This document shows, piece by piece, positions 1,767 to 30,720 of a stretch of 33,000 nucleotides of DNA (within the stretch, counting starts at the first letter, position 1; the number at the start of each line of letters is the position of its first letter). The position numbers and the translations under genes are program-made. The DNA comes from Octopus bimaculoides (taxonomy: Eukaryota), in contig NC_068992.1 in the NCBI RefSeq assembly GCF_001194135.2, positions 5,799,547-5,832,546 of the forward strand, given 5' to 3'. The notes beneath the pieces were generated by a model that was given only the letters and a program-made list of their open reading frames with translations, did no database searches and was not told the DNA's origin.

Positions 1767-2015
1767 AGCGTGGCTGTGTGGTAAATAGCTTGCTTACCAT
1801 CCACATGGTTCAGGGTTCAGTCCCACTGCGTGGCACCTTGAGCAAGTGTCTTCTACTAAAGCCTGGGGCCGACCAAAGCCTTGTGAGTGGATTTCGTAGA
1901 CGGAAACTGAAAGAAGACTGTCGTATATNNNNNNNNNNNNNNNNNNNNNNNNNNNNNNNNNNNNNNNNNNNNNNNNNNNNNNNNNNNNNNNNNNNNNNNN
2001 NNNNNNNNNNNNNNN

Positions 2016-2089
<74 letters not shown>

Positions 2090-2320
2090 GTATGTATGTA
2101 TGTATGTATGTATGTATGCTTGTATATGTTTGTGTGTCTGCATTTGTTCCCCCACCATCGCTTGACAACCGATGCTGGTGTGTTTACGTCCCCTTAACTT
2201 AGCGATTTGGCAAAAGAGACCGATAGAATAAGTACTAGGCTTACAAAGAATAAGCGTATTGTCGATTTTCTCGACTAAAAACGGTGCTCTAGCATGGCCG
2301 CAGTCAAAATGACTCAAACC
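1767..2320 (+). mobile_element. tRNA-derived SINE (family 1) with an internal (TA)/(TG)/(TATG) microsatellite and an assembly gap
   Basis: A-box-like TGGCTGTGTGG (1771-1781), B-box-like GGTTCAGTCCC (1814-1824), CCTTGAGCAAGTG motif as in CORE/V-type SINE bodies, 3' tail GGTGCTCTAGCATGGCCGCAGTC; a second degenerate copy lies at 26671. Confidence 0.85.
1929..2015. other. Assembly gap (87 N) inside a microsatellite
   Basis: N run flanked by TA/TG repeats. Confidence 0.99.
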
Positions 2321-4213
2321 AATGACAGAATATATGAATATATAGAATGTCTCATGCAAGATAATTTCGAAAATAATCGTATATAGGGAAACCACCAGCC
2401 CGAAATTCAAATTCCGGGGTGTTGCTACTTCCAATATTGAAACTTTAACTATATGGTCCAATTCCATCCGCTTCATTTAACTACAGCACAGAACAGCCAC
2501 ACTGTGATGTTTCGGACGTAGATGCTAACTTGTTGGTAGTCTGCATCCTGGTTTTATCAAGGTGGTCACTGGACATTAATGTATCAATTACAGCGCATTG
2601 TTGTTTTCATATAATATATTATACGCGGATATTTGTGCAGTATTTGTATGCCAGATGTAATTATATTTTATAGACGATCAGAAACTATTGAAATCCAAAA
2701 TTAACACTGAAAAAGAGTCCAGTTCTCTCAGAATATATTCACGTTCTCCAACATTATGTATGTAGATGTACATAAATGAAAGCAATTTCTATTAATCTGT
2801 GTTATTAGTTGTTCAGAATATGAATTCTGCAAAAAAGAAAAAGAAACACCGTTTCCAAACTGCGTTTTCAAAATATTCACCGAAAACTCATTAAACCACT
2901 AAGTATTAGTTTTCTTGTTAATGCAAGTGTAATGGAGTCTGAAGTTATGAATTGGGCACAGATCGGAAATAATATCTGTTTATTTTATACAAAACCTGCA
3001 TGACATGAGAGTGTAATGAGATAGAGTAGACACATGAGAAAAAGTTCTGAATGAATAGAATTAAAAAAATGGATAAAATATGATGATGTGTTTGTTATTG
3101 GTGTTATCGCCTTTAATGATAATATTGATTTTTTTAGTGGTGGCCGTGGCAGTAACGTTTTGTTGTCTGCTGCAACCAAAAGGGACCATCATCCAAGCAT
3201 CTAGTTGATATTTGCTATGCTATTAGTTGCAAATGTATACGATAAAGCGGCAAATTCACTTGATGATAACTTCAAAGATTGTGTAAAAATTGAAAGGAAA
3301 ACAAATATATTAAACGTAAAAACCTTATCATGAAGACATGTATTAGTATAGTGTATTTAATCTAAATAAATCACCGGGGAACGGGTCACTCAAAAGTGAG
3401 ATTGAAGAATAAATGGAACTACTAACAGAACTGAAAATCGGAAAATCTTTCTCAAAGACATCATCACTAGCGATGCATTTGTTATTATTCCAAGGAGAGA
3501 GAGAGATGATGTGAAACTAGTCATCTACTTATAAATTAATACCACTACTCTCGTCTATAGTCGTCTTTCATTGGATACGTTTTATACCACTTTTTCATTC
3601 AAAACATCTCTGCATTGGAAAGAGAAAATCAATAATTTGGAAGCAAATACAAAATATGCTTTTCTTTTAGTTTTTATCAGTTTAACATTAAATTTCTATA
3701 TATAATTTAAATATCTTCTGGGATCCAACAGCATATAAAATCAGGTTTGCCTCAATACGTAATGTTTATTTATGAAAGAATAATCGAGAATTTTATCGAA
3801 CATTTCTTTCTATGTAAGATTTCCTGTCTAGGTGTGGCAATTCACAATATCAAACATCTTTTTTTCTTTTCTTAAACACATACCATTTTAAACTGCTTAA
3901 AACCAACTGAGGAAACAACAAATCTAAGAAAATTAGTGAAGTGTTAAAGAACACCTCAAGGTAAATTTTCTGATTCTTGTAGCTTATTGTTTGCTCGTTT
4001 TCTTTCTATTTTGTACCAAAATTTCCTTTGCATCAGTTACGGCACCACGTCAAAAATGCGACACGTGACTTTAAAATATTCCTCTTCGGTTTCTCAAATG
4101 CAATGAAGCAGAATCTTCCCGTCTTCCTTTCTTTAAACATTCTCCCTGTTGCACTCTTGGACCAAACGATAACGGCAAAATTTACACATGCGCATACTGC
4201 CACAAATGCATAC

Positions 4214-4753: not shown

Positions 4754-5244
4754 CTATTGGTATTTAAGCCAAATATAAGGACGAACTAACCATTATGACG
4801 CACTTATTTGTATCCTAATTCCCTCAATGGCTGCATAATTAGATAATTATGAAGTCTCTATATGCAAGAGGACATGTTAAAAAGCTAATGTAAATTTCAG
4901 TTAGAAATCTACAGATTTTAATTCTTCGCTGTAAGTCTAAACTTCCACGTAGAATATAAAAAGTGCATTTGCACTAATGTTAGTGATCTTCATGGGGTCA
5001 TCGATATACAAGAAATGACTTACATATTGGTATTCATATGGAGATTATTTACCGTAAGTGAAGATATAATCAACTTAGCACTTACTATGAATTAGACGTG
5101 ATACTTCGGTTCTAATGTAATAGAGTTAATATCTGAGTAAGACTCACACAAACAGATAGAAACATAACTATACATACATATTGACATGCGTATAAATATG
5201 AAAAATGTGTACTTATAACATGTAACACACATATATTATATACG

Positions 5245-5290
<46 letters not shown>

Positions 5291-5417
5291 TGTGTGTATG
5301 AGCCAAAACTAGACGCACACATACTTACACATGCACATATATGGATATGAACATGTTTCCCTCCCTCTCTAGAGCGCATTTATAAATACACACACACACA
5401 CACACACATACACACAG

Positions 5418-5474
<57 letters not shown>

Positions 5475-8183: not shown

Positions 8184-9037
8184 CTATCAGTTTAAAAAGT
8201 GAAAGCCTTTCGTCATAGTTTTGCTTAAATAAAACTATCACGTGACCAAACAACAGTCCAACTACAGTAACACTAATACCGTACGCCAAAGTCTACAGGA
8301 AGCTACTAATTGGGAGTTAAACCTACAAGAAATATCAGGCAAATCTTCGAGTGACTTAAATTAAACTGTTCTGTATAAATATAAGAAATATTACGTATTG
8401 TATCCTTAAATATATTACATGTATCATATCCCACCCAGTTGCATAGATCTTAAATCTGTTTGGGAATAGTTCTACTGTATAAAAGTTGTGTCGGTAATAA
8501 ACAGAAACGTAACATATTCAATCATTATGCCTCTCGCTAGTAGAGATTAAAAATAATTAATGCTAATACAGTTCTATGCATGATGATCAATCAGAATTAT
8601 GTTCCCACACAACTATAATCGCTTCGTGTTACAGAGTATTCAAAACATATGAAGATTCATTACAAATGAAAATTCGTCTTCAGCTTCCACTCAAACGTGT
8701 CCGTTACAGCATCGGCCAAAAAACATTGCGCATTTACTGCCGAACCTTGCGTTCACAGTGTTCAAATTGCGGTGAGATCAGGTTTGTCTTTCCTCCATCA
8801 TAAGACGATAGATTAAGGTACATTTCAAGAGTGAGAAAATGTAGAAAAGCTTAAAACTTAAAACAGGGGAATAAGCTTCGATTCTTAATTCTTTAATTTA
8901 AAATTTTCGCTTTTACTGAAGTGGGTGATAGACATAATCTAGTGCCTAGTGCAACACTCCTCCCCAGGGCCTCAGTTCATTTTTCAACCTCAACTCTGCA
9001 GCAAATATTCGAGCCAGGCCTTGAATTTAAGGATTAC

Positions 9038-13176: not shown

Positions 13177-13394
13177 AAGCGGCGCGCTTGCTGAAACGTT
13201 AGCACGCCGGGTGAAATTCTTAGCGGTATTTCGTCTGTCTTTACATTCCGAGTTCAAATTCCACCGAGGTCGACTTTGCCTTTCATACTTTCGGGGTCGA
13301 TAAATTAAGCACCAGCTGTGTGCTGTGGTCGATCTAATCTATTAGCCCCTTACCCCCAAAATGTTGTGCCTTGTGCCTAGAGTAGAAAAGATTA
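13177..13394 (+). mobile_element. Full-length tRNA-derived SINE (family 2) with 14-bp TSD
   Basis: B-box GAGTTCAAATTCC (13250-13262); central CTTTCATACTTTCGGGGTCGATAAATTAAGCACCAG resembling the Sauria/Meta-type SINE core; TSD TTTTCCTCTCCATA (13163-13176) / TTTTCTTCTCCATA (13395-13408), 13/14 identical. Confidence 0.9.
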
Positions 13395-13919
13395 TTTTCT
13401 TCTCCATATTACTTTCACCTTTCTAACGTTTTGAGCGATGCCATCGATTAACCCAAGAATTAGTGTAGTCTACCATAACCAACATCCAGTGATAGGAGCT
13501 AATTCCGAGTCAATGAGGATGCTTTGTACTCAATGCCCCTCCTATCCTGACTTCACCCACACACAATTCCACAAATAATGTCGAATTTTTCTAACCAGAA
13601 TAATTGAATCGAGTGAAAATATACTTCCTTGTACGTAGCATCAATAATAGTTACAGTTGTTGAGCCTGTTTGAACTAAATCCGATCGCCATAGTTGGAAC
13701 GTCTTCGATATCTCTTGTAATGATTAACAGAGAGATACTGAGTTTCAGTGAAATTAACTGCAGTAAATACAAATAGACAAAGCTCAGTTCAAGTAAGAAT
13801 TGAACGCTCATTCTGGTTTTACTCAATTGGAGGAACAATTGAACTCTCATCGAAACTTCTTTCACTGTGCACTTCTACTTACTGGATTTTCTAAGTCGAT
13901 ATTATTGATCATTTTTGTG

Positions 13920-14146: not shown

Positions 14147-14210
14147 TCTCTCTCTCTCTATCNNNNNNNNNNTATATATATATATATATATCCCTCTCCC
14201 TCTCTCTCTC
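14147..14210. repeat. (CT)n/(TA)n microsatellite with a 10-N gap (14163-14172)
   Basis: Read directly. Confidence 0.9.
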
Positions 14211-17711: not shown

Positions 17712-18500
17712 NNNNNNNNNNNNNNNNNNNNNNNNNNNNNNNNNNNNNNNNNNNNNNNNNNNNNNNNNNNNNNNNNNNNNNNNNNNNNNNNNNNNNNNNN
17801 NNNNNNNNNNNNNNNNNNNNNNNNNNNNNNNNNNNNNNNNNNNNNNNNNNNNNNNNNNNNNNNNNNNNNNNNNNNNNNNNNNNNNNNNNNNNNNNNNNNN
17901 NNNNNNNNNNNNNNNNNNNNNNNNNNNNNNNNNNNNNNNNNNNNNNNNNNNNNNNNNNNNNNNNNNNNNNNNNNNNNNNNNNNNNNNNNNNNNNNNNNNN
18001 NNNNNNNNNNNNNNNNNNNNNNNNNNNNNNNNNNNNNNNNNNNNNNNNNNNNNNNNNNNNNNNNNNNNNNNNNNNNNNNNNNNNNNNNNNNNNNNNNNNN
18101 NNNNNNNNNNNNNNNNNNNNNNNNNNNNNNNNNNNNNNNNNNNNNNNNNNNNNNNNNNNNNNNNNNNNNNNNNNNNNNNNNNNNNNNNNNNNNNNNNNNN
18201 NNNNNNNNNNNNNNNNNNNNNNNNNNNNNNNNNNNNNNNNNNNNNNNNNNNNNNNNNNNNNNNNNNNNNNNNNNNNNNNNNNNNNNNNNNNNNNNNNNNN
18301 NNNNNNNNNNNNNNNNNNNNNNNNNNNNNNNNNNNNNNNNNNNNNNNNNNNNNNNNNNNNNNNNNNNNNNTATATATATATGTATATATATATATACTCC
18401 ATATTTTTATGTGTAGGTATTATGCGTCTCTTCATGGATGTACATATATACATACTTACATACACACATACAAACACAAACACACACACATATACATACG

Positions 18501-18544
<44 letters not shown>

Positions 18545-18642
18545 CATACATACATACATATATATATGTACATATATATATACATATATATATATATGTA
18601 TATATATGTATACATATATGTACATATATATATATATATATA
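17662..18642. repeat. Long (TA)n/(TACA)n microsatellite containing a 659-N gap (17712-18370)
   Basis: Read directly. Confidence 0.97.
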
Positions 18643-20178: not shown

Positions 20179-20206
20179 ATATTATTATTATTATTATTAT
20201 TATTAC

Positions 20207-20257
<51 letters not shown>
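20179..20257. repeat. (TTA)n microsatellite
   Basis: Near-perfect run with one CTA interruption. Confidence 0.97.
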
Positions 20258-20259
20258 CA

Positions 20260-20413
20260 TTCTGTCTTTACGTTCTGATTTTAAATTCACGCCGAGGTCG
20301 ACTTTGCATTTCATCCTTTCGGCGTCGATAAATTAAGTACCATTGAAACACTGGGGTCGATACTATCGACTAGTCACTTCTCCAAAACGTCAGGCCTTGT
20401 GTCTTTAGTTGAA
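20260..20413 (+). mobile_element. 5'-truncated SINE family 2 copy
   Basis: GCCGAGGTCGACTTTGCATTTCATCCTTTCGGCGTCGATAAATTAAGTACC...CTGGGGTCGAT...GGCCTTGTG is clearly homologous to 13177-13394; no A-box head. Confidence 0.85.

Positions 20414-20490
<77 letters not shown>
20414..20490. repeat. (ATT)n microsatellite, expanded SINE tail
   Basis: Perfect run directly after the SINE 3' end; the 13177 copy also ends in ATTATT. Confidence 0.95.
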
Positions 20491-22199: not shown

Positions 22200-22288
22200 A
22201 TACATAAACATGTATACACACACACACGCGCACACACGCACACACGCACACACACACATACACACACAAACACAAACACACACACACG

Positions 22289-22353
<65 letters not shown>

Positions 22354-22500
22354 ATGTGTGTGTATATGTATATATGTATCTATATATATATCCATATATA
22401 TATATATGTATATATGCATATATGTGTGTGTCTGTCTCTATGTGTAAATATGCGTGCGTACGTATGTGTGTGTGTGTGTGTGTGTCTCTGCGTGTGTAGA
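22200..22500. repeat. Compound (CA)n/(TA)n/(TG)n microsatellite
   Basis: Read directly; boundaries approximate. Confidence 0.95.
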
Positions 22501-25695: not shown

Positions 25696-26670
25696 TAGTA
25701 GTAGTATTAATGTTAATAGCGACCGAAAGAAATAGTAACAAGCAGAATCAAACGTAAGATTGCTCCGCATTTGCCTGATGTTTAAAATGAATTAGCTGCG
25801 TGTGTGGTATGTTGTTTAGAACCACGCTTTGTAATTGTTTTTGATATGAGATATAAGGATATGTCTACATGTGACTTATTTTGTTGCATGTAATGTATTC
25901 TGAAATTTTATTTGTGTGTGCGTTGTAGAATTGATGGTAATCAATGCTGGAAATCAATTTGTACGTGCAACTACAATTGAATTAACAAAGCCACTACTGA
26001 GGCTTTGAAGTAACGTTCAATGCATGAAAAGCGACAAATAAATTTGTAAGGATATCTGAAAAGAATGATTGCATGTAATAATGAAAGATCACCATTACTT
26101 TCCAGAGTAAAGTACAAAGTAAAACTGAGCATAATCTGCTTCTAGCTAGTCAGTGAACAAGTTAGAAATAAGGCAAGATCTCTCTGAAAATAGATTCTAC
26201 CATTTATGCTAAAGGGAAAAGTCACAACGGAATAACGAAATTGTACTAAGAGGAAGCGTTAAACAAAGTATTAATCTCGTTGTGCCGTTTCATTTAAGAT
26301 TTTTCAGAACTTATTGGATCCGGTCACTTTTGAACGTTTGTGACTGATAGAAACTGAAGAAGTGTATTTCTCCTTTAATAAATTTATTCATCAATGCATC
26401 ATGTGTTGTTGATAATGAATTTAGTGCATTTCTTTTGCAACTTCAAAGTTCATCCCCGTATACCTGGGCTCTCTTCGACGCAAAATTGAGTTTGAGTAGT
26501 ATCATTTGGGATGAGTGACTGTGTCCCTTTAAAAGTACTTTAGAATACGTAGATCCCTATATCTAATAATTTCCTCTCCCATTCTCTTTCTCGCTATATA
26601 CAGATATTCTGATACATCAATATAAATATAATGTATGTATGTATGTATGTATGTATGCATGTACATACAT

Positions 26671-26866
26671 GTGTGGCGTATGGCAAGAAGTGTGCTTCCA
26701 AACCACATTGTTCTCGTGTTGGTCTGTTTATGATCTAGCAACTTAGAGGTTCAGCTCAATTGACCGATAGAATAAATACGAAGCTTTAAAAGAAAATAGT
26801 ACTGAGGTTGATGTCTTCCACTAAAATTCTTCACAGCAATGTCCCAACATGACAACTGTCTGAACC
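26671..26866 (+). mobile_element. Diverged, internally deleted SINE family 1 copy
   Basis: Head TGGCAAGAAGTGTGCTTCCAAACCACATTG and 3' part AACTTAGAGGTTC...GACCGATAGAATAAATAC...GCTTTAAAAGAA match 1780-1810 and 2195-2250; the middle is missing. Confidence 0.7.
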
Positions 26867-27180
26867 ATTAAAATATACTTTTTATTCACTGAAATTATTA
26901 TTGTATGATGCAATCTCCGAAACGGTCGTATTCCTAATGATAAGTGGTTAAATAACTGTATTCACCTCTCATACCCCTTGACATATCATGGTTTGTATAC
27001 GGCTCACGATATCAGTTCATCGAATGGACATCCTTAATTTCAGCAACAGGGATCGTGGTATAATACTCCTCTGTATTGGAAAATTTTGTGCTGTGATAGC
27101 CAGGTCCACTACAGGAGCTTTCTGTGATAGCCACGTTATTCTATAGATCCGTTTATTGCTCTCTTTTTCTCTCTCTTTCT

Positions 27181-27222
<42 letters not shown>

Positions 27223-27459
27223 GTACGCAATGGCACACACAAACACACGAACGCACTTACATACTAACACTCACATACAGGCACACGCTTAATGTATCGC
27301 ATTTTTGTAAATATTGAAACAAACAAAACCGTTCTTTGTTTGATTTCTTCTGCTCATTCAAACCGTGAAATGTCTTCCACCAACTCACCACAATTTTACA
27401 CGTTTCACAAATAGTTATATATTTACTTAAATCCACTTCTTTATATTCATTCCTTCATT

Positions 27460-27652
27460 TATTTCCCTCCTTATTGCTCTCTTTCTTTCTCACTGGCTCT
27501 CACACTACTCTCTCTTTATTTTTTCTCCACATTCTTTCACGTGTCCACCATTTTAGCTGTTTTGTTTTTAACTGTTCCTCTCAAAATATAAATATGAATT
27601 TATGTGCATTTCTCCATTGTTCTTTCTTTTTACCTTTCCCTCTCTCTCTCTC

Positions 27653-27696
<44 letters not shown>

Positions 27697-28110
27697 CCTT
27701 TCTCTTGCTCTTTTCCTTTGCTTTCTATTTCATTGAGTCTGCACATTTCTCTTCTATTTCCTCGTAACCATATTCTTCGTACTTATTTGCTCCGCATTTC
27801 TTGTACATTTTGAGTCCCCCTCTCTATCTCAGTCAAACTCTTTCTCTCTCTCTCCTTTCTCTTTCATGTCTCTCCTTTCTTTCTTTCTTTCTTTCTCCCC
27901 CCTCTCTCTCTGTTTCTCATAACTCTCCATTTATTTCCACATCTCTCTCTAGCTCTTTATCTTTTGAACTTGAATTTTCTTATTTCTTCCTTTCTTAATG
28001 TCATCTATTTATTCTCCCTCTATTTTTCCTTTCCTTATCGTTCTCTCTCCCCCTTTCTCTATCTCTCTTTATTTCATTCATCTCAATATCTCTCTTTTTT
28101 TTTTTCATTC
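27460..28110 (+). repeat. Long pyrimidine-rich low-complexity tract including (CT)n at about 27638-27692
   Basis: Read directly; strong C/T strand skew. Confidence 0.9.
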
Positions 28111-28968: not shown

Positions 28969-30469
28969 AAAGTTTCTATTTTATTTCTTATTTTCATAAG
29001 GAATATTGGATTTGGATATGGATTTCTAGTATTGCAAAAGACGGTGGTTTTATTTCAGTATGCATTGATAAAACACAGGAGAAAAAGAAGACAAAATGGA
29101 CTATTGGTTTTAAAATAAAATTGTATGCAACATTCAAAAGCATTCGTTATTTTTAAGTGCATAAATCATCGCTGATTTGTTCAGAGTCCATCACAGAGTA
29201 ATTTGTAAACGTAACTGATGTTTAATTTTTTCGAATGTCAGAATTTGAAAACGTATTTAACCCATTTCGCCATCTATTAGATAGTGTAGTTTAACACATA
29301 ATAGTAAGTATAAAAGAGAATAGCTTATATCTTATGAAAGTAGCTTCTAAATAAATTGTAATGAAATAGAGTGCTGTTGCGGCTACAAGGAATGCCACTT
29401 GTCAAAAAATAGCAAAATAAATTCTTCCAAACAATATATAGCTGAAGGTAAGTAATAATAACAGATATAAAATACCACATATAAATATCTATCTCTCTCG
29501 TTCTGTCTCTTTTTCTTTCTTTCTCTCTCACTCTCGCTGCATACATATGTGTCTGTGTGTATGTCTGCGTGTGTGTGTGTGTGTGTGTGTATAAATCCAA
29601 TAATTTGGATAGCCCTGTGTGGTTCTTAAGGACCAACTCCATGGAATATAAAACAAGAGTGATGTCGAAGAAAACCCCATATGGTAATTGATCTGAATAA
29701 TGCAAACTAAGCTAAGCTGAAAGATTTCATATTCATTTTTATATCTATGACTCCCACCGGTCCCCTGAAGTACAGAGCAGAAATTTCAGCAAATGTAAAC
29801 ATATGGACAAGTTACTTTAGTAGAATTGCAGAATACTACCCTCGCAGACATCGGAAACCGTTTGGCTGATTCTATAGCAACTAACTTTATGGCTTTATAG
29901 TGAAAGAGGATTCACTCAAATCCATTCCCATCACTATATTTGGAAGAGAATATTAGCACCTTCAGAAATGCATCACCAGATGATTACACAGAGTGCATCT
30001 ATAACATATCTAAAGGCGTTCGTACCTAGGTCTGCTCATTGATGGCGAATAAAGAAATGGAAATATATGACGAAATATTTTCTAAAATGTGCTGGCGATG
30101 GTCATATTTGGAACGATCTCTTTTATCCTATGCAGTAGTCGCTAAAAGACAACGGTAAATTATCGGCCTAAAAACAACTCATTAATCCCGCTTAAATCAC
30201 TCGTTACCGTTGATGAAAAGGACATGCCGTACTTGAAGGGCCATTCAATCTCAGTTAAATGAACAAGAAAACAACGGGAATGAATAATGGCAATATATAG
30301 GTGAAAAACCTACGATGCATCGCAGTGCATCTCCGGAAATACAAATAGAAATAAATGTAGCAATTGAAAGCAAAAAAATCTTTAATATCATTTTTCTCTT
30401 TTAAATTCATTTGCATAATTTACAGAACCCTAATTATATATGAATTGTATGTGCATGCATATGTGTACG

Positions 30470-30504
30470 TGACACGCAAATTCGTGAAGCGTTCCATATT
30501 TTTT
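30470..30504 (+). pseudogene. U6: U6 snRNA 3'-terminal fragment (retrocopy)
   Basis: TGACACGCAAATTCGTGAAGCGTTCCATATTTTTT is identical to the conserved 3' end of metazoan U6 snRNA including the oligo-U tail; the 5' two-thirds of U6 is absent. Confidence 0.9.
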
Positions 30505-30507
30505 ACA

Positions 30508-30558
30508 CGGTGGTGCATCAGCATGGCCGCAGCTCCGAGCTGAAACTTTGAAATGAAA
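30508..30558 (+). mobile_element. Retroposon 3' tail joined to the U6 fragment
   Basis: CGGTGGTGCATCAGCATGGCCGCAGCTCCGAGCTGAAAC shares GTGC..AGCATGGCCGCAG with the SINE tail at 2283-2304 and ends in short GAAAT-type repeats. Confidence 0.75.
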
Positions 30559-30559
30559 T

Positions 30560-30633
30560 ATGTATGCATGTCTGTATGTATGTGTATGTATGCACACATA
30601 CACAGATATATTCATACAAGCTTACATATATTC

Positions 30634-30667
<34 letters not shown>

Positions 30668-30720
30668 GTATAAATATACTCGCACACGCATATATTTGTA
30701 TATATATATATAGGTATACA
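30560..30720. repeat. (TA)n/(TATG)n tract
   Basis: Read directly; boundaries approximate. Confidence 0.9.

What the first reader, a model, noticed from the sequence alone, without database searches (positions are those of the whole stretch)
30470..30558. U6 snRNA 3' end fused to a retroposon tail: a U6-retroelement chimera or an undescribed U6-derived SINE
Seen: 35 nt identical to the U6 3' end with six T, then ACA, then a ~50-nt tail sharing GTGC..AGCATGGCCGCAG with the SINE tail at 2283-2304 in this same window. Established: U6-LINE chimeric retrocopies are well known in mammals (U6 oligo-U end joined to L1 sequence, attributed to template switching or RtcB ligation), SINEs borrow 3' tails from partner LINEs, and snRNA-headed SINEs exist (U1/U2-derived SINEU in crocodilians). 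Inference: the same process acting in a mollusc with a non-L1 (probably RTE-type) LINE. Many copies with an identical junction would define a Pol III-transcribed, U6-headed SINE family; varied junctions would mean recurrent chimera formation. This copy is 5'-truncated and has no clear TSD.
Basis: partly seen in the sequence, partly recalled or inferred. Interest (0 to 1): 0.8.

Follow-up and report, generated by a model that had tools for sequence, protein, structure and literature searches.

The report
Truncated U6 fused to retroposon tail
A 35-base copy of the end of the U6 spliceosomal RNA sits directly against the last ~55 bases of an octopus-type retroposon tail, most likely a dead by-product of a reverse transcriptase jumping between two RNAs, a kind of chimera already described in platypus and lizard, so it is a modest new example and not a new class.

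Summary
Window 30470-30504 is the 3' end of U6 snRNA, in sense and ending in a run of six T. Two or three unassignable bases follow. Then comes a ~52-nt stretch (to 30559) that shares a 20/22 block (GGTGCnnnAGCATGGCCGCAG) and a hairpin in the same place with the 3' end of a SINE-like repeat at 1768-2345. The same tail core occurs in two Octopus vulgaris transcripts. About 34 nt of (TATG)n follows.

The best reading is one chimeric retrocopy: a non-L1, tail-recognising LINE enzyme started on a LINE or SINE tail, then switched to the 3' end of U6 RNA (or copied a ligated U6-tail RNA), and stopped after 35 nt. It has no promoter and is inert.

Doucet et al. 2015 described exactly this architecture for L2, RTE, CR1 and their SINEs in platypus, opossum, Anolis and turkey: a 5'-truncated U6, a short stringent-LINE or SINE tail, a simple repeat, and short or no target-site duplications (TSDs). 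So this is a new member of a known kind, possibly the first noted in a mollusc.

The more exciting reading, a U6-headed SINE family, could not be tested because no cephalopod genome was reachable with the tools. It is mechanistically weak, since the U6 promoter is external. The partner LINE is unidentified and the TSDs are ambiguous. Interest is low to moderate.

The parts
30470..30504 (+). 3'-terminal 35 nt of U6 snRNA (Rfam model positions ~72-105 plus one extra T). The T-run is 30499-30504. The copy is 5'-truncated, and U6 nt 1-71 are absent.
30505..30507 (+). Junction bases ACA. AC, and perhaps the A, cannot be assigned to either partner. They may be non-templated bases added at a template jump. 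The shared string ACGGTG in the in-window repeat starts at 30507.
   Evidence: direct reading of the alignment
30508..30559 (+). Retroposon-type 3' tail. It has a conserved block GGTGCATCAGCATGGCCGCAG (30512-30532), a hairpin CAGCT-CCG-AGCTG (30530-30542), and then AAAC plus the A/T-rich end TTTGAAATGAAAT.
30559..30592 (+). (TATG)n simple repeat, about 9 units at 75% match, directly after the tail. It is either the terminal repeat of the retroposon or part of the target microsatellite. More AT/TATG-rich repeats continue to about 30726.
30444..30469 (+). Upstream flank, TG/TA-rich and microsatellite-like. It contains TATGTGTA (30460-30467), which recurs at 30579-30586. This is the only candidate TSD and is not convincing in this low-complexity context.
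1768..2345 (+). Comparator, not part of the chimera: a composite SINE-like repeat. It has a head with box A/B-like motifs (1768-1928), an assembly gap (1929-2015), an internal (TG)n/(TGTA)n (2016-2135), and a body whose 3' end (2283-2303 and the hairpin at 2302-2315) matches the chimera's tail.

Best explanation
This is a single, dead-on-arrival chimeric retrocopy.

Inferred mechanism: a non-LTR retrotransposon enzyme of the 'stringent' kind, which recognises a structured 3' tail instead of poly(A), nicked the genome in or next to a TG/TA microsatellite. It began reverse transcription on the 3' tail of its own RNA or of a dependent SINE RNA. After copying about 52 nt it continued on the 3' end of a U6 snRNA. 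That step was either an end-to-end template jump, with the 2-3 unassignable junction bases added without a template, or the copying of an RNA in which U6 had already been ligated to a tail fragment. It copied 35 nt of U6 and aborted, which gave the 5' truncation.

Shown: the two parts, their orientation, the junction at the natural U6 3' end, and the tail's kinship to an octopus repeat tail. Inferred: co-insertion, the enzyme, and the order of events.

The product has no promoter and no expected function.
For: (1) U6 is in sense and ends exactly at its natural oligo-U end. The tail begins 2-3 nt later in the same orientation. That is the signature of RNA-to-RNA joining, not of DNA rearrangement.

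(2) The tail shares a 20/22 block with the 3' end of the in-window SINE-like repeat. The same 13-mer ends two O. vulgaris transcript contigs from the supplement of PMC9115989.

(3) Right after the core, three of the four tails fold into a 5-bp hairpin at the same place, with different and mutually compensating stems: CAGCT/AGCTG, AGTCA/TGACT, CAGCC/GGCTG. Each is followed by (G/C)AAA(C/T). A stem-loop tail is what stringent LINEs recognise (PMC4476161).

(4) A simple repeat, (TATG)n, follows the tail. Another SINE family in the window ends in (ATT)n, so simple-repeat termini occur among the repeats here.

(5) There is precedent with the same anatomy. Almost all of the 40 platypus chimeras of U6 with L2 or its SINE Mon-1 have a 5'-truncated U6 upstream of a short L2 sequence, with TSDs of only 1-9 bp. 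Anolis has U6 chimeras with L2, RTE and AnolisSINE2. Opossum has 5'-truncated U6 with RTE and RTESINE1 and no TSD.

(6) Such tails occur about twice per 33 kb here. An independent insertion starting within a few bases of the U6 end in the same orientation therefore has a prior of roughly 1e-4 per U6 fragment (my estimate).
Against: Only one copy could be examined.

The donor LINE or SINE carrying this exact tail variant (GCAGCTCCGAGCTGAAAC) was not found: not in the window, and not in the 400 kb of O. vulgaris transcripts that could be searched.

Tail homology outside the 22-nt block is weak. The hairpin energies are not individually better than shuffles.

The TSD is ambiguous: an 8-mer inside low-complexity sequence.

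No empty orthologous site could be checked, so co-insertion is inferred and not shown.

That the comparator is a SINE rests on its structure and on my memory of octopus repeats. ARAGORN and Rfam do not call its head a tRNA.
Confidence: 0.68

Rival explanations
1. This is one 5'-truncated copy of a multi-copy retroposon family whose head is U6-derived, a U6-headed SINE-like family comparable to SINEU or snoRTE. It would have been founded by one chimera that then became a master copy mobilised through its LINE-type tail.
For: The structure, a small-RNA piece plus a LINE-type tail, is how such families begin. Examples are snoRTE/PlatSINE1, MeloSINE with a 28S 3' end, and SINEU. 5' truncation is normal for LINE-mobilised copies. 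The 35/35 intact U6 part with three intact CpGs suggests a young insertion. Copy number could not be measured.
Against: Only one copy is in the 33 kb window. Metazoan snRNA promoters, U6's included, lie upstream with no internal promoter (PMC4494074), so a retrocopy would lose its promoter. Independent chimeras are the documented outcome in vertebrates. The searchable library held no paper combining U6 snRNA with octopus or mollusc repeat terms.
Confidence: 0.12
2. The adjacency comes from two unrelated events. A U6 gene or pseudogene remnant lost its 5' 72 nt by deletion or microsatellite turnover, and a 5'-truncated retroposon fragment separately landed, or already lay, just downstream of the U6 terminator.
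For: There is no clear TSD around the whole unit. Both flanks are unstable microsatellite. The region is repeat-dense.
Against: It needs a coincidence of position (within 2-3 nt of the RNA 3' end) and of orientation, plus a separate 5' deletion. No U6 upstream promoter context or 5' remnant is present.
Confidence: 0.12
3. The 'tail' is not retroposon-derived at all. The 13-mer match would be chance, or the tail would be a rearranged internal piece of U6, because AGCATGGCC is also U6 nt 53-61.
For: A 9-mer shared with internal U6 arises in 1.6% of shuffles. A 13-mer between a 55-nt query and 66 kb has about 0.04 expectation (my calculation). Identity outside the block is low.
Against: The match to the repeat tail is longer (20/22 against 13/16 for U6). 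It lies at the 3' end of a repeat. It is accompanied by a hairpin in the same place and a GAAAC motif, and it recurs in O. vulgaris transcripts. The tail alone gives no U6 hit or any other Rfam hit, even at E 10.
Confidence: 0.05
4. It is an assembly artefact: a false join of reads in a scaffold built from short reads.
For: The window has three N gaps and many microsatellites, so the assembly is fragmentary.
Against: The whole unit is about 90 nt, shorter than a read. No gap lies within 12 kb.
Confidence: 0.03

Closest known systems
U6 chimeras with L2 / Mon-1 in platypus, and with L2, RTE and AnolisSINE2 in Anolis (Doucet et al. 2015, PMC4476161; their Group IV snRNA pseudogenes)
   Same: U6 is in sense and ends at its natural 3' end. 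It is usually 5'-truncated and fused to a short 3' piece of a stringent LINE or its SINE, with a simple repeat at the end. TSDs are 1-9 bp or absent.
   Different: The host here is a mollusc (apparently an octopus), not a vertebrate. The donor element is not identified. Only one copy was seen.
U6/L1 chimeras of placental mammals (Buzdin 2002; Garcia-Perez 2007; RNA-ligation model cited in PMC11838501)
   Same: U6 oligo-U end joined to a 5'-truncated retrotransposon 3' part, in the same orientation. The mechanisms are the same (template switch or RNA ligation).
   Different: There, U6 is predominantly full-length, the partner is L1 with poly(A), and TSDs are long and clear. Here U6 is cut to 35 nt, the tail has a stem-loop plus (TATG)n, and there is no clear TSD.
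snRNA/snoRNA/rRNA-headed SINEs: SINEU (U1/U2, crocodilians), snoRTE/PlatSINE1 (platypus), MeloSINE (28S 3' end)
   Same: A small structural RNA piece sits upstream of a LINE-type tail. These families probably began as a chimera like this one.
   Different: Those are families with uniform junctions across many copies. Uniformity and copy number are untested here, and only a 3' fragment of U6 is present.
Octopus SINE-like repeat carrying the tail core GGTGCnnnAGCATGGCCGCAG plus hairpin (window 1768-2345; tails in O. vulgaris transcripts)
   Same: Conserved 21-nt block, a hairpin in the same position, and a GAAAC-type motif.
   Different: The chimera's tail differs in the stem sequence and in everything 3' of it. 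It comes from a sister subfamily or from the partner LINE, not from this repeat.

Membership tests
snRNA/retrotransposon chimeric retrocopy (Group IV of Doucet et al. 2015) | The snRNA part is in sense and ends at the natural RNA 3' end, joined directly to retrotransposon sequence in the same orientation. | tested here: met
   U6 model positions 72-105 end at 30503/30504 (T-run). The tail starts at 30505-30508 on the same strand.
snRNA/retrotransposon chimeric retrocopy (Group IV of Doucet et al. 2015) | The downstream part is the 3'-terminal, 5'-truncated portion of a LINE or SINE and carries that element's 3' terminus. | tested here: inconclusive
   There is a 20/22 block plus a hairpin in the same place, shared with the 3' end of an in-window SINE-like repeat and with two O. 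vulgaris transcript ends, and (TATG)n follows. The donor with this exact tail was not found.
snRNA/retrotransposon chimeric retrocopy (Group IV of Doucet et al. 2015) | One pair of target-site duplications flanks the whole chimera. | tested here: inconclusive
   The only candidate is TATGTGTA at 30460-67 and 30579-86, inside low-complexity sequence. Short or absent TSDs are usual for non-L1 chimeras.
snRNA/retrotransposon chimeric retrocopy (Group IV of Doucet et al. 2015) | Both parts arrived together (empty orthologous site in a relative). | not testable with these tools
   No cephalopod genome was reachable. The metagenome, viral and protein-index routes all came back empty.
SINE with an snRNA-derived head (SINEU / snoRTE type) | Many copies with a uniform head-tail junction. 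| not testable with these tools
   There is one copy in the window, and no access to the rest of the genome.
SINE with an snRNA-derived head (SINEU / snoRTE type) | The head includes the 5' part of the source RNA or another means of transcription. | tested here: not met
   Only the last 35 nt of U6 are present, with no U6 5' part upstream. This could be 5' truncation of this copy, so it weighs against membership without excluding it.
SINE with an snRNA-derived head (SINEU / snoRTE type) | The 3' tail is shared with a partner LINE in the same genome. | not testable with these tools
   No LINE ORF or RT domain is in the window.
Functional U6 snRNA gene (Rfam RF00026) | Full-length, about 105 nt, scoring above the gathering score. 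| tested here: not met
   20.5 bits against a gathering score of 44, with 71 model positions missing.

The most novel reading that the evidence does not exclude
The unit is one copy of an undescribed, multi-copy octopus retroposon family in which a U6 3' fragment, or full-length U6 in complete copies, is permanently fused at a fixed junction to a stringent-LINE tail. That would be the first U6-derived (Pol III type-3 gene-derived) SINE-like family.
Probability: 0.1. Interest if true: 0.6.

Novelty: new member of a known kind. Interest (0 to 1): 0.27.

Why it matters
If confirmed as a co-inserted chimera, it extends U6 capture by non-L1, tail-recognising LINEs from vertebrates to a mollusc. That supports the view that template switching or ligation to U6 is a general property of non-LTR retrotransposition (PMC4476161). 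It also gives a small, datable marker of recent LINE activity in a cephalopod genome. In itself the element is inert. Only if many copies share the junction would it bear on how new SINE families arise from RNAs that lack internal promoters.

Tried and rejected
1. Fetching other copies.
- A junction pattern (U6 end, 0-30 nt, tail core) in metagenome contigs gave 0 hits.
- The general tail pattern gave 62 hits, all chance matches limited to the pattern, in unrelated contigs with no SINE homology.
- Viral contigs gave 0 hits.

2. Protein-index route.
- The minus-strand ORF that spans the chimera found no candidates.
- An ORF across the SINE body found no candidates.
- A window ORF is not on record.
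- So the indexed collections seem to hold no cephalopod non-coding DNA.

3. Literature.
- Sequence strings of the tail and the SINE were not found in any paper text.
- The first 400 kb of the O. vulgaris transcriptome supplement holds the tail core twice.
- It does not hold this tail variant, U6, or the SINE body/head strings.
- A second paper's supplements were empty of all of these.

4. 'The tail is U6-derived': rejected.

5. tRNA origin of the comparator's head: not confirmed by ARAGORN or Rfam.

6. The mir-297, mir-466 and mir-3149 hits around 30553-30720 and elsewhere are microsatellite artefacts, all far below gathering scores.

7. Similarity of the tail's end to the 3' end of the SINE's first module (before its internal microsatellite): not significant, p 0.41.

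8. Pfam on the eight least repetitive ORFs gave nothing above cut-off and no RT or EN domain.

Full report
WHAT IS THERE

Window 30470-30504 reads TGACACGCAAATTCGTGAAGCGTTCCATATTTTTT. Rfam's U6 model aligns 30469-30503 to its last 34 positions, with every conserved position matching. The score is 20.5 bits, below the gathering score of 44 only because 71 of 105 positions are missing. No full RNA gene of any family reaches threshold anywhere in the window. The 27-mer core is unique in the window and never appears in shuffles. Against human U6 written from memory, the fragment equals nt 74-107 plus one extra T. Upstream of 30470 there is only TG/TA-rich low-complexity sequence and no trace of U6 nt 1-73.

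After the six T come ACA and then CGGTGGTGCATCAGCATGGCCGCAGCTCCGAGCTGAAACTTTGAAATGAAAT, running to 30559. About nine units of (TATG)n follow, and then further AT-rich repeats.

IS THE TAIL A RETROPOSON TAIL?

The 13-mer AGCATGGCCGCAG occurs only twice in the window, at 30520 and 2291, even when two mismatches are allowed. Around it the two loci share GGTGC, then 3 nt, then the 13-mer. That is 20/22 in a local alignment, scoring above all 2000 shuffles.

The 2291 site is the 3' end of a long composite SINE-like repeat on the + strand:
- a head with box A/B-like motifs at 1768-1928;
- an assembly gap at 1929-2015;
- an internal (TG)n/(TGTA)n;
- a body at 2140-2345.

A diverged relative of this repeat lies at 26662-26890. 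I recognise it from memory as the abundant octopus SINE. The tools support this only indirectly. The tail core is found twice, on the reverse strand and at the very ends of contigs, in the part of the Octopus vulgaris transcriptome that is held as text (supplement of PMC9115989). ARAGORN and Rfam do not call the head a tRNA.

Immediately at the end of the core, three of the four available tails fold into a 5-bp hairpin at the same position, with different stems:
- CAGCU/AGCUG in the chimera;
- AGUCA/UGACU in the window repeat;
- CAGCC/GGCUG in one O. vulgaris tail.

Each hairpin is followed by (G/C)AAA(C/T). The fourth tail is degenerate. With so few sequences this covariation is suggestive only, and the energies are not significant on their own. 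It is nevertheless the kind of 3' stem-loop that tail-recognising ('stringent') LINEs and their SINEs carry (PMC4476161).

Outside the 22-nt block the chimera's tail is not close to the in-window repeat. Its exact variant was not found elsewhere. So the donor is a sister subfamily or the partner LINE itself, and it remains unidentified. The tail alone matches no Rfam family, U6 included. Its 9-nt identity to internal U6 (AGCATGGCC) arises in 1.6% of shuffles, and I treat it as chance.

HOW IT MOST LIKELY AROSE

The informative feature is the junction. U6 is in sense and stops at the natural oligo-U end of the RNA. The tail follows 2-3 nt later on the same strand. That is what joining of two RNAs produces. 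It can happen by a template jump of a LINE reverse transcriptase that had started on the tail, or by reverse transcription of an already ligated U6-tail RNA.

Copying then stopped 35 nt into U6. The flanks on both sides are TG/TA microsatellite. The only candidate target-site duplication is an 8-mer, TATGTGTA at 30460-67 and 30579-86, which cannot be trusted in that context.

SINE-type tails occur roughly twice per 33 kb here. An unrelated insertion beginning within a few bases of the U6 end, in the same orientation, is therefore a priori rare: about 1e-4 per U6 fragment by my estimate. I therefore favour co-insertion, but it is inferred and not shown.

COMPARISON WITH WHAT IS KNOWN

Doucet et al. 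2015 (PMC4476161, section 10) report the following.
- Forty platypus chimeras of U6 with L2 or its SINE Mon-1. Almost all have a 5'-truncated U6 upstream of a short L2 sequence, and TSDs are only 1-9 bp.
- Anolis chimeras with L1, L2, RTE and AnolisSINE2.
- Opossum 5'-truncated U6 with RTE and with RTESINE1, without TSD.
- A turkey U6-CR1 case.
- Their conclusion that template switching to U6 is a general property of non-LTR retrotransposons.

The present unit has exactly that anatomy. It differs from the mammalian U6/L1 chimeras, in which U6 is predominantly full-length.

Families such as SINEU, snoRTE/PlatSINE1 and MeloSINE show that such chimeras can occasionally become SINEs. They are recognised by uniform chimeric structure across many copies.

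WHAT COULD NOT BE DONE

Copy number and junction uniformity decide between 'sporadic chimera' and 'U6-headed family'. They need the source genome, and none of the collections I could search holds cephalopod DNA.
- The junction pattern scan was empty.
- The general tail scan returned only chance matches.
- The viral scan was empty.
- Two protein-index searches with ORFs spanning the chimera and the SINE found no candidates.
- A window ORF is not on record.
- No LINE is present in the window.
- No paper in the searchable library combines U6 snRNA with octopus or mollusc repeat terms.

VERDICT

The best explanation, at about 0.68, is a single inert chimeric retrocopy: a 5'-truncated U6 joined to the tail of a stringent LINE or SINE. 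It is a new member, possibly the first noted in a mollusc, of a kind already documented in vertebrates.

The U6-headed SINE family reading remains open at about 0.1. It is disfavoured because vertebrate snRNA promoters, U6's included, lie upstream of the gene with no internal promoter reported (PMC4494074), and because sporadic chimeras are the documented norm. Interest is low to moderate.

Noticed in passing
window 1768-2345 (+): A full composite SINE-like repeat. It has a head with box A/B-like motifs, an 87-N assembly gap (1929-2015), an internal (TG)n/(TGTA)n microsatellite, and then a 200-nt body. The internal microsatellite suggests a fusion of two retroposon modules. ARAGORN and Rfam do not recognise the head as tRNA.
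   Followed up: partly
window 26662-26890 (+): A diverged relative (about 69% over 110 nt) of the same repeat body, directly preceded by (ATGT)n at 26631-26660. Its tail has a different hairpin (GACA/TGTC) before TGAACC.
   Followed up: partly
window 13200-13420, 20261-20440, 8761-8822 (+): A second SINE-like family, with copies about 75% alike. The 20261 copy ends in a long (ATT)n (20410-20490) and is preceded by another (ATT)n (20190-20260).
   Followed up: no
window 2290-2299 and 30520-30528 vs U6 nt 52-61: The conserved core of the SINE tail, (T)AGCATGGCC, is identical to 9-10 nt of the internal region of U6 (…GATTAGCATGGCCCCTGCGC…). A 9-mer arises in 1.6% of shuffles. It is probably chance, but it is curious beside a U6 chimera.
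   Followed up: partly
O. vulgaris transcript in supplement file 3 of PMC9115989 (near part 40): A 3'-UTR-like stretch contains CGTTCCATATTTTT, 14 nt identical to the U6 3' end, followed by GTATGTTTGCATG-type sequence. It may be another very short U6 3' remnant next to a TG/TA repeat, or it may be chance.
   Followed up: no
window 17712-18370, 14163-14172, 1929-2015: Assembly gaps (runs of N). The 659-N gap is reported by the repeat finder as a perfect 'inverted repeat' (I1-I6), which is an artefact.
   Followed up: yes
window 27000-28100: A strongly strand-skewed CT-rich stretch (GC skew -0.51, AT skew -0.36) made of (CT)n/(CTTT)n-like repeats.
   Followed up: no
window 30553-30720, 5210-5450, 18480-18640, 22280-22440: Sub-threshold Rfam hits to mir-297, mir-466, mir-3149 and mir-1277 on both strands. 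All coincide with TG/TA microsatellites and are false positives.
   Followed up: yes
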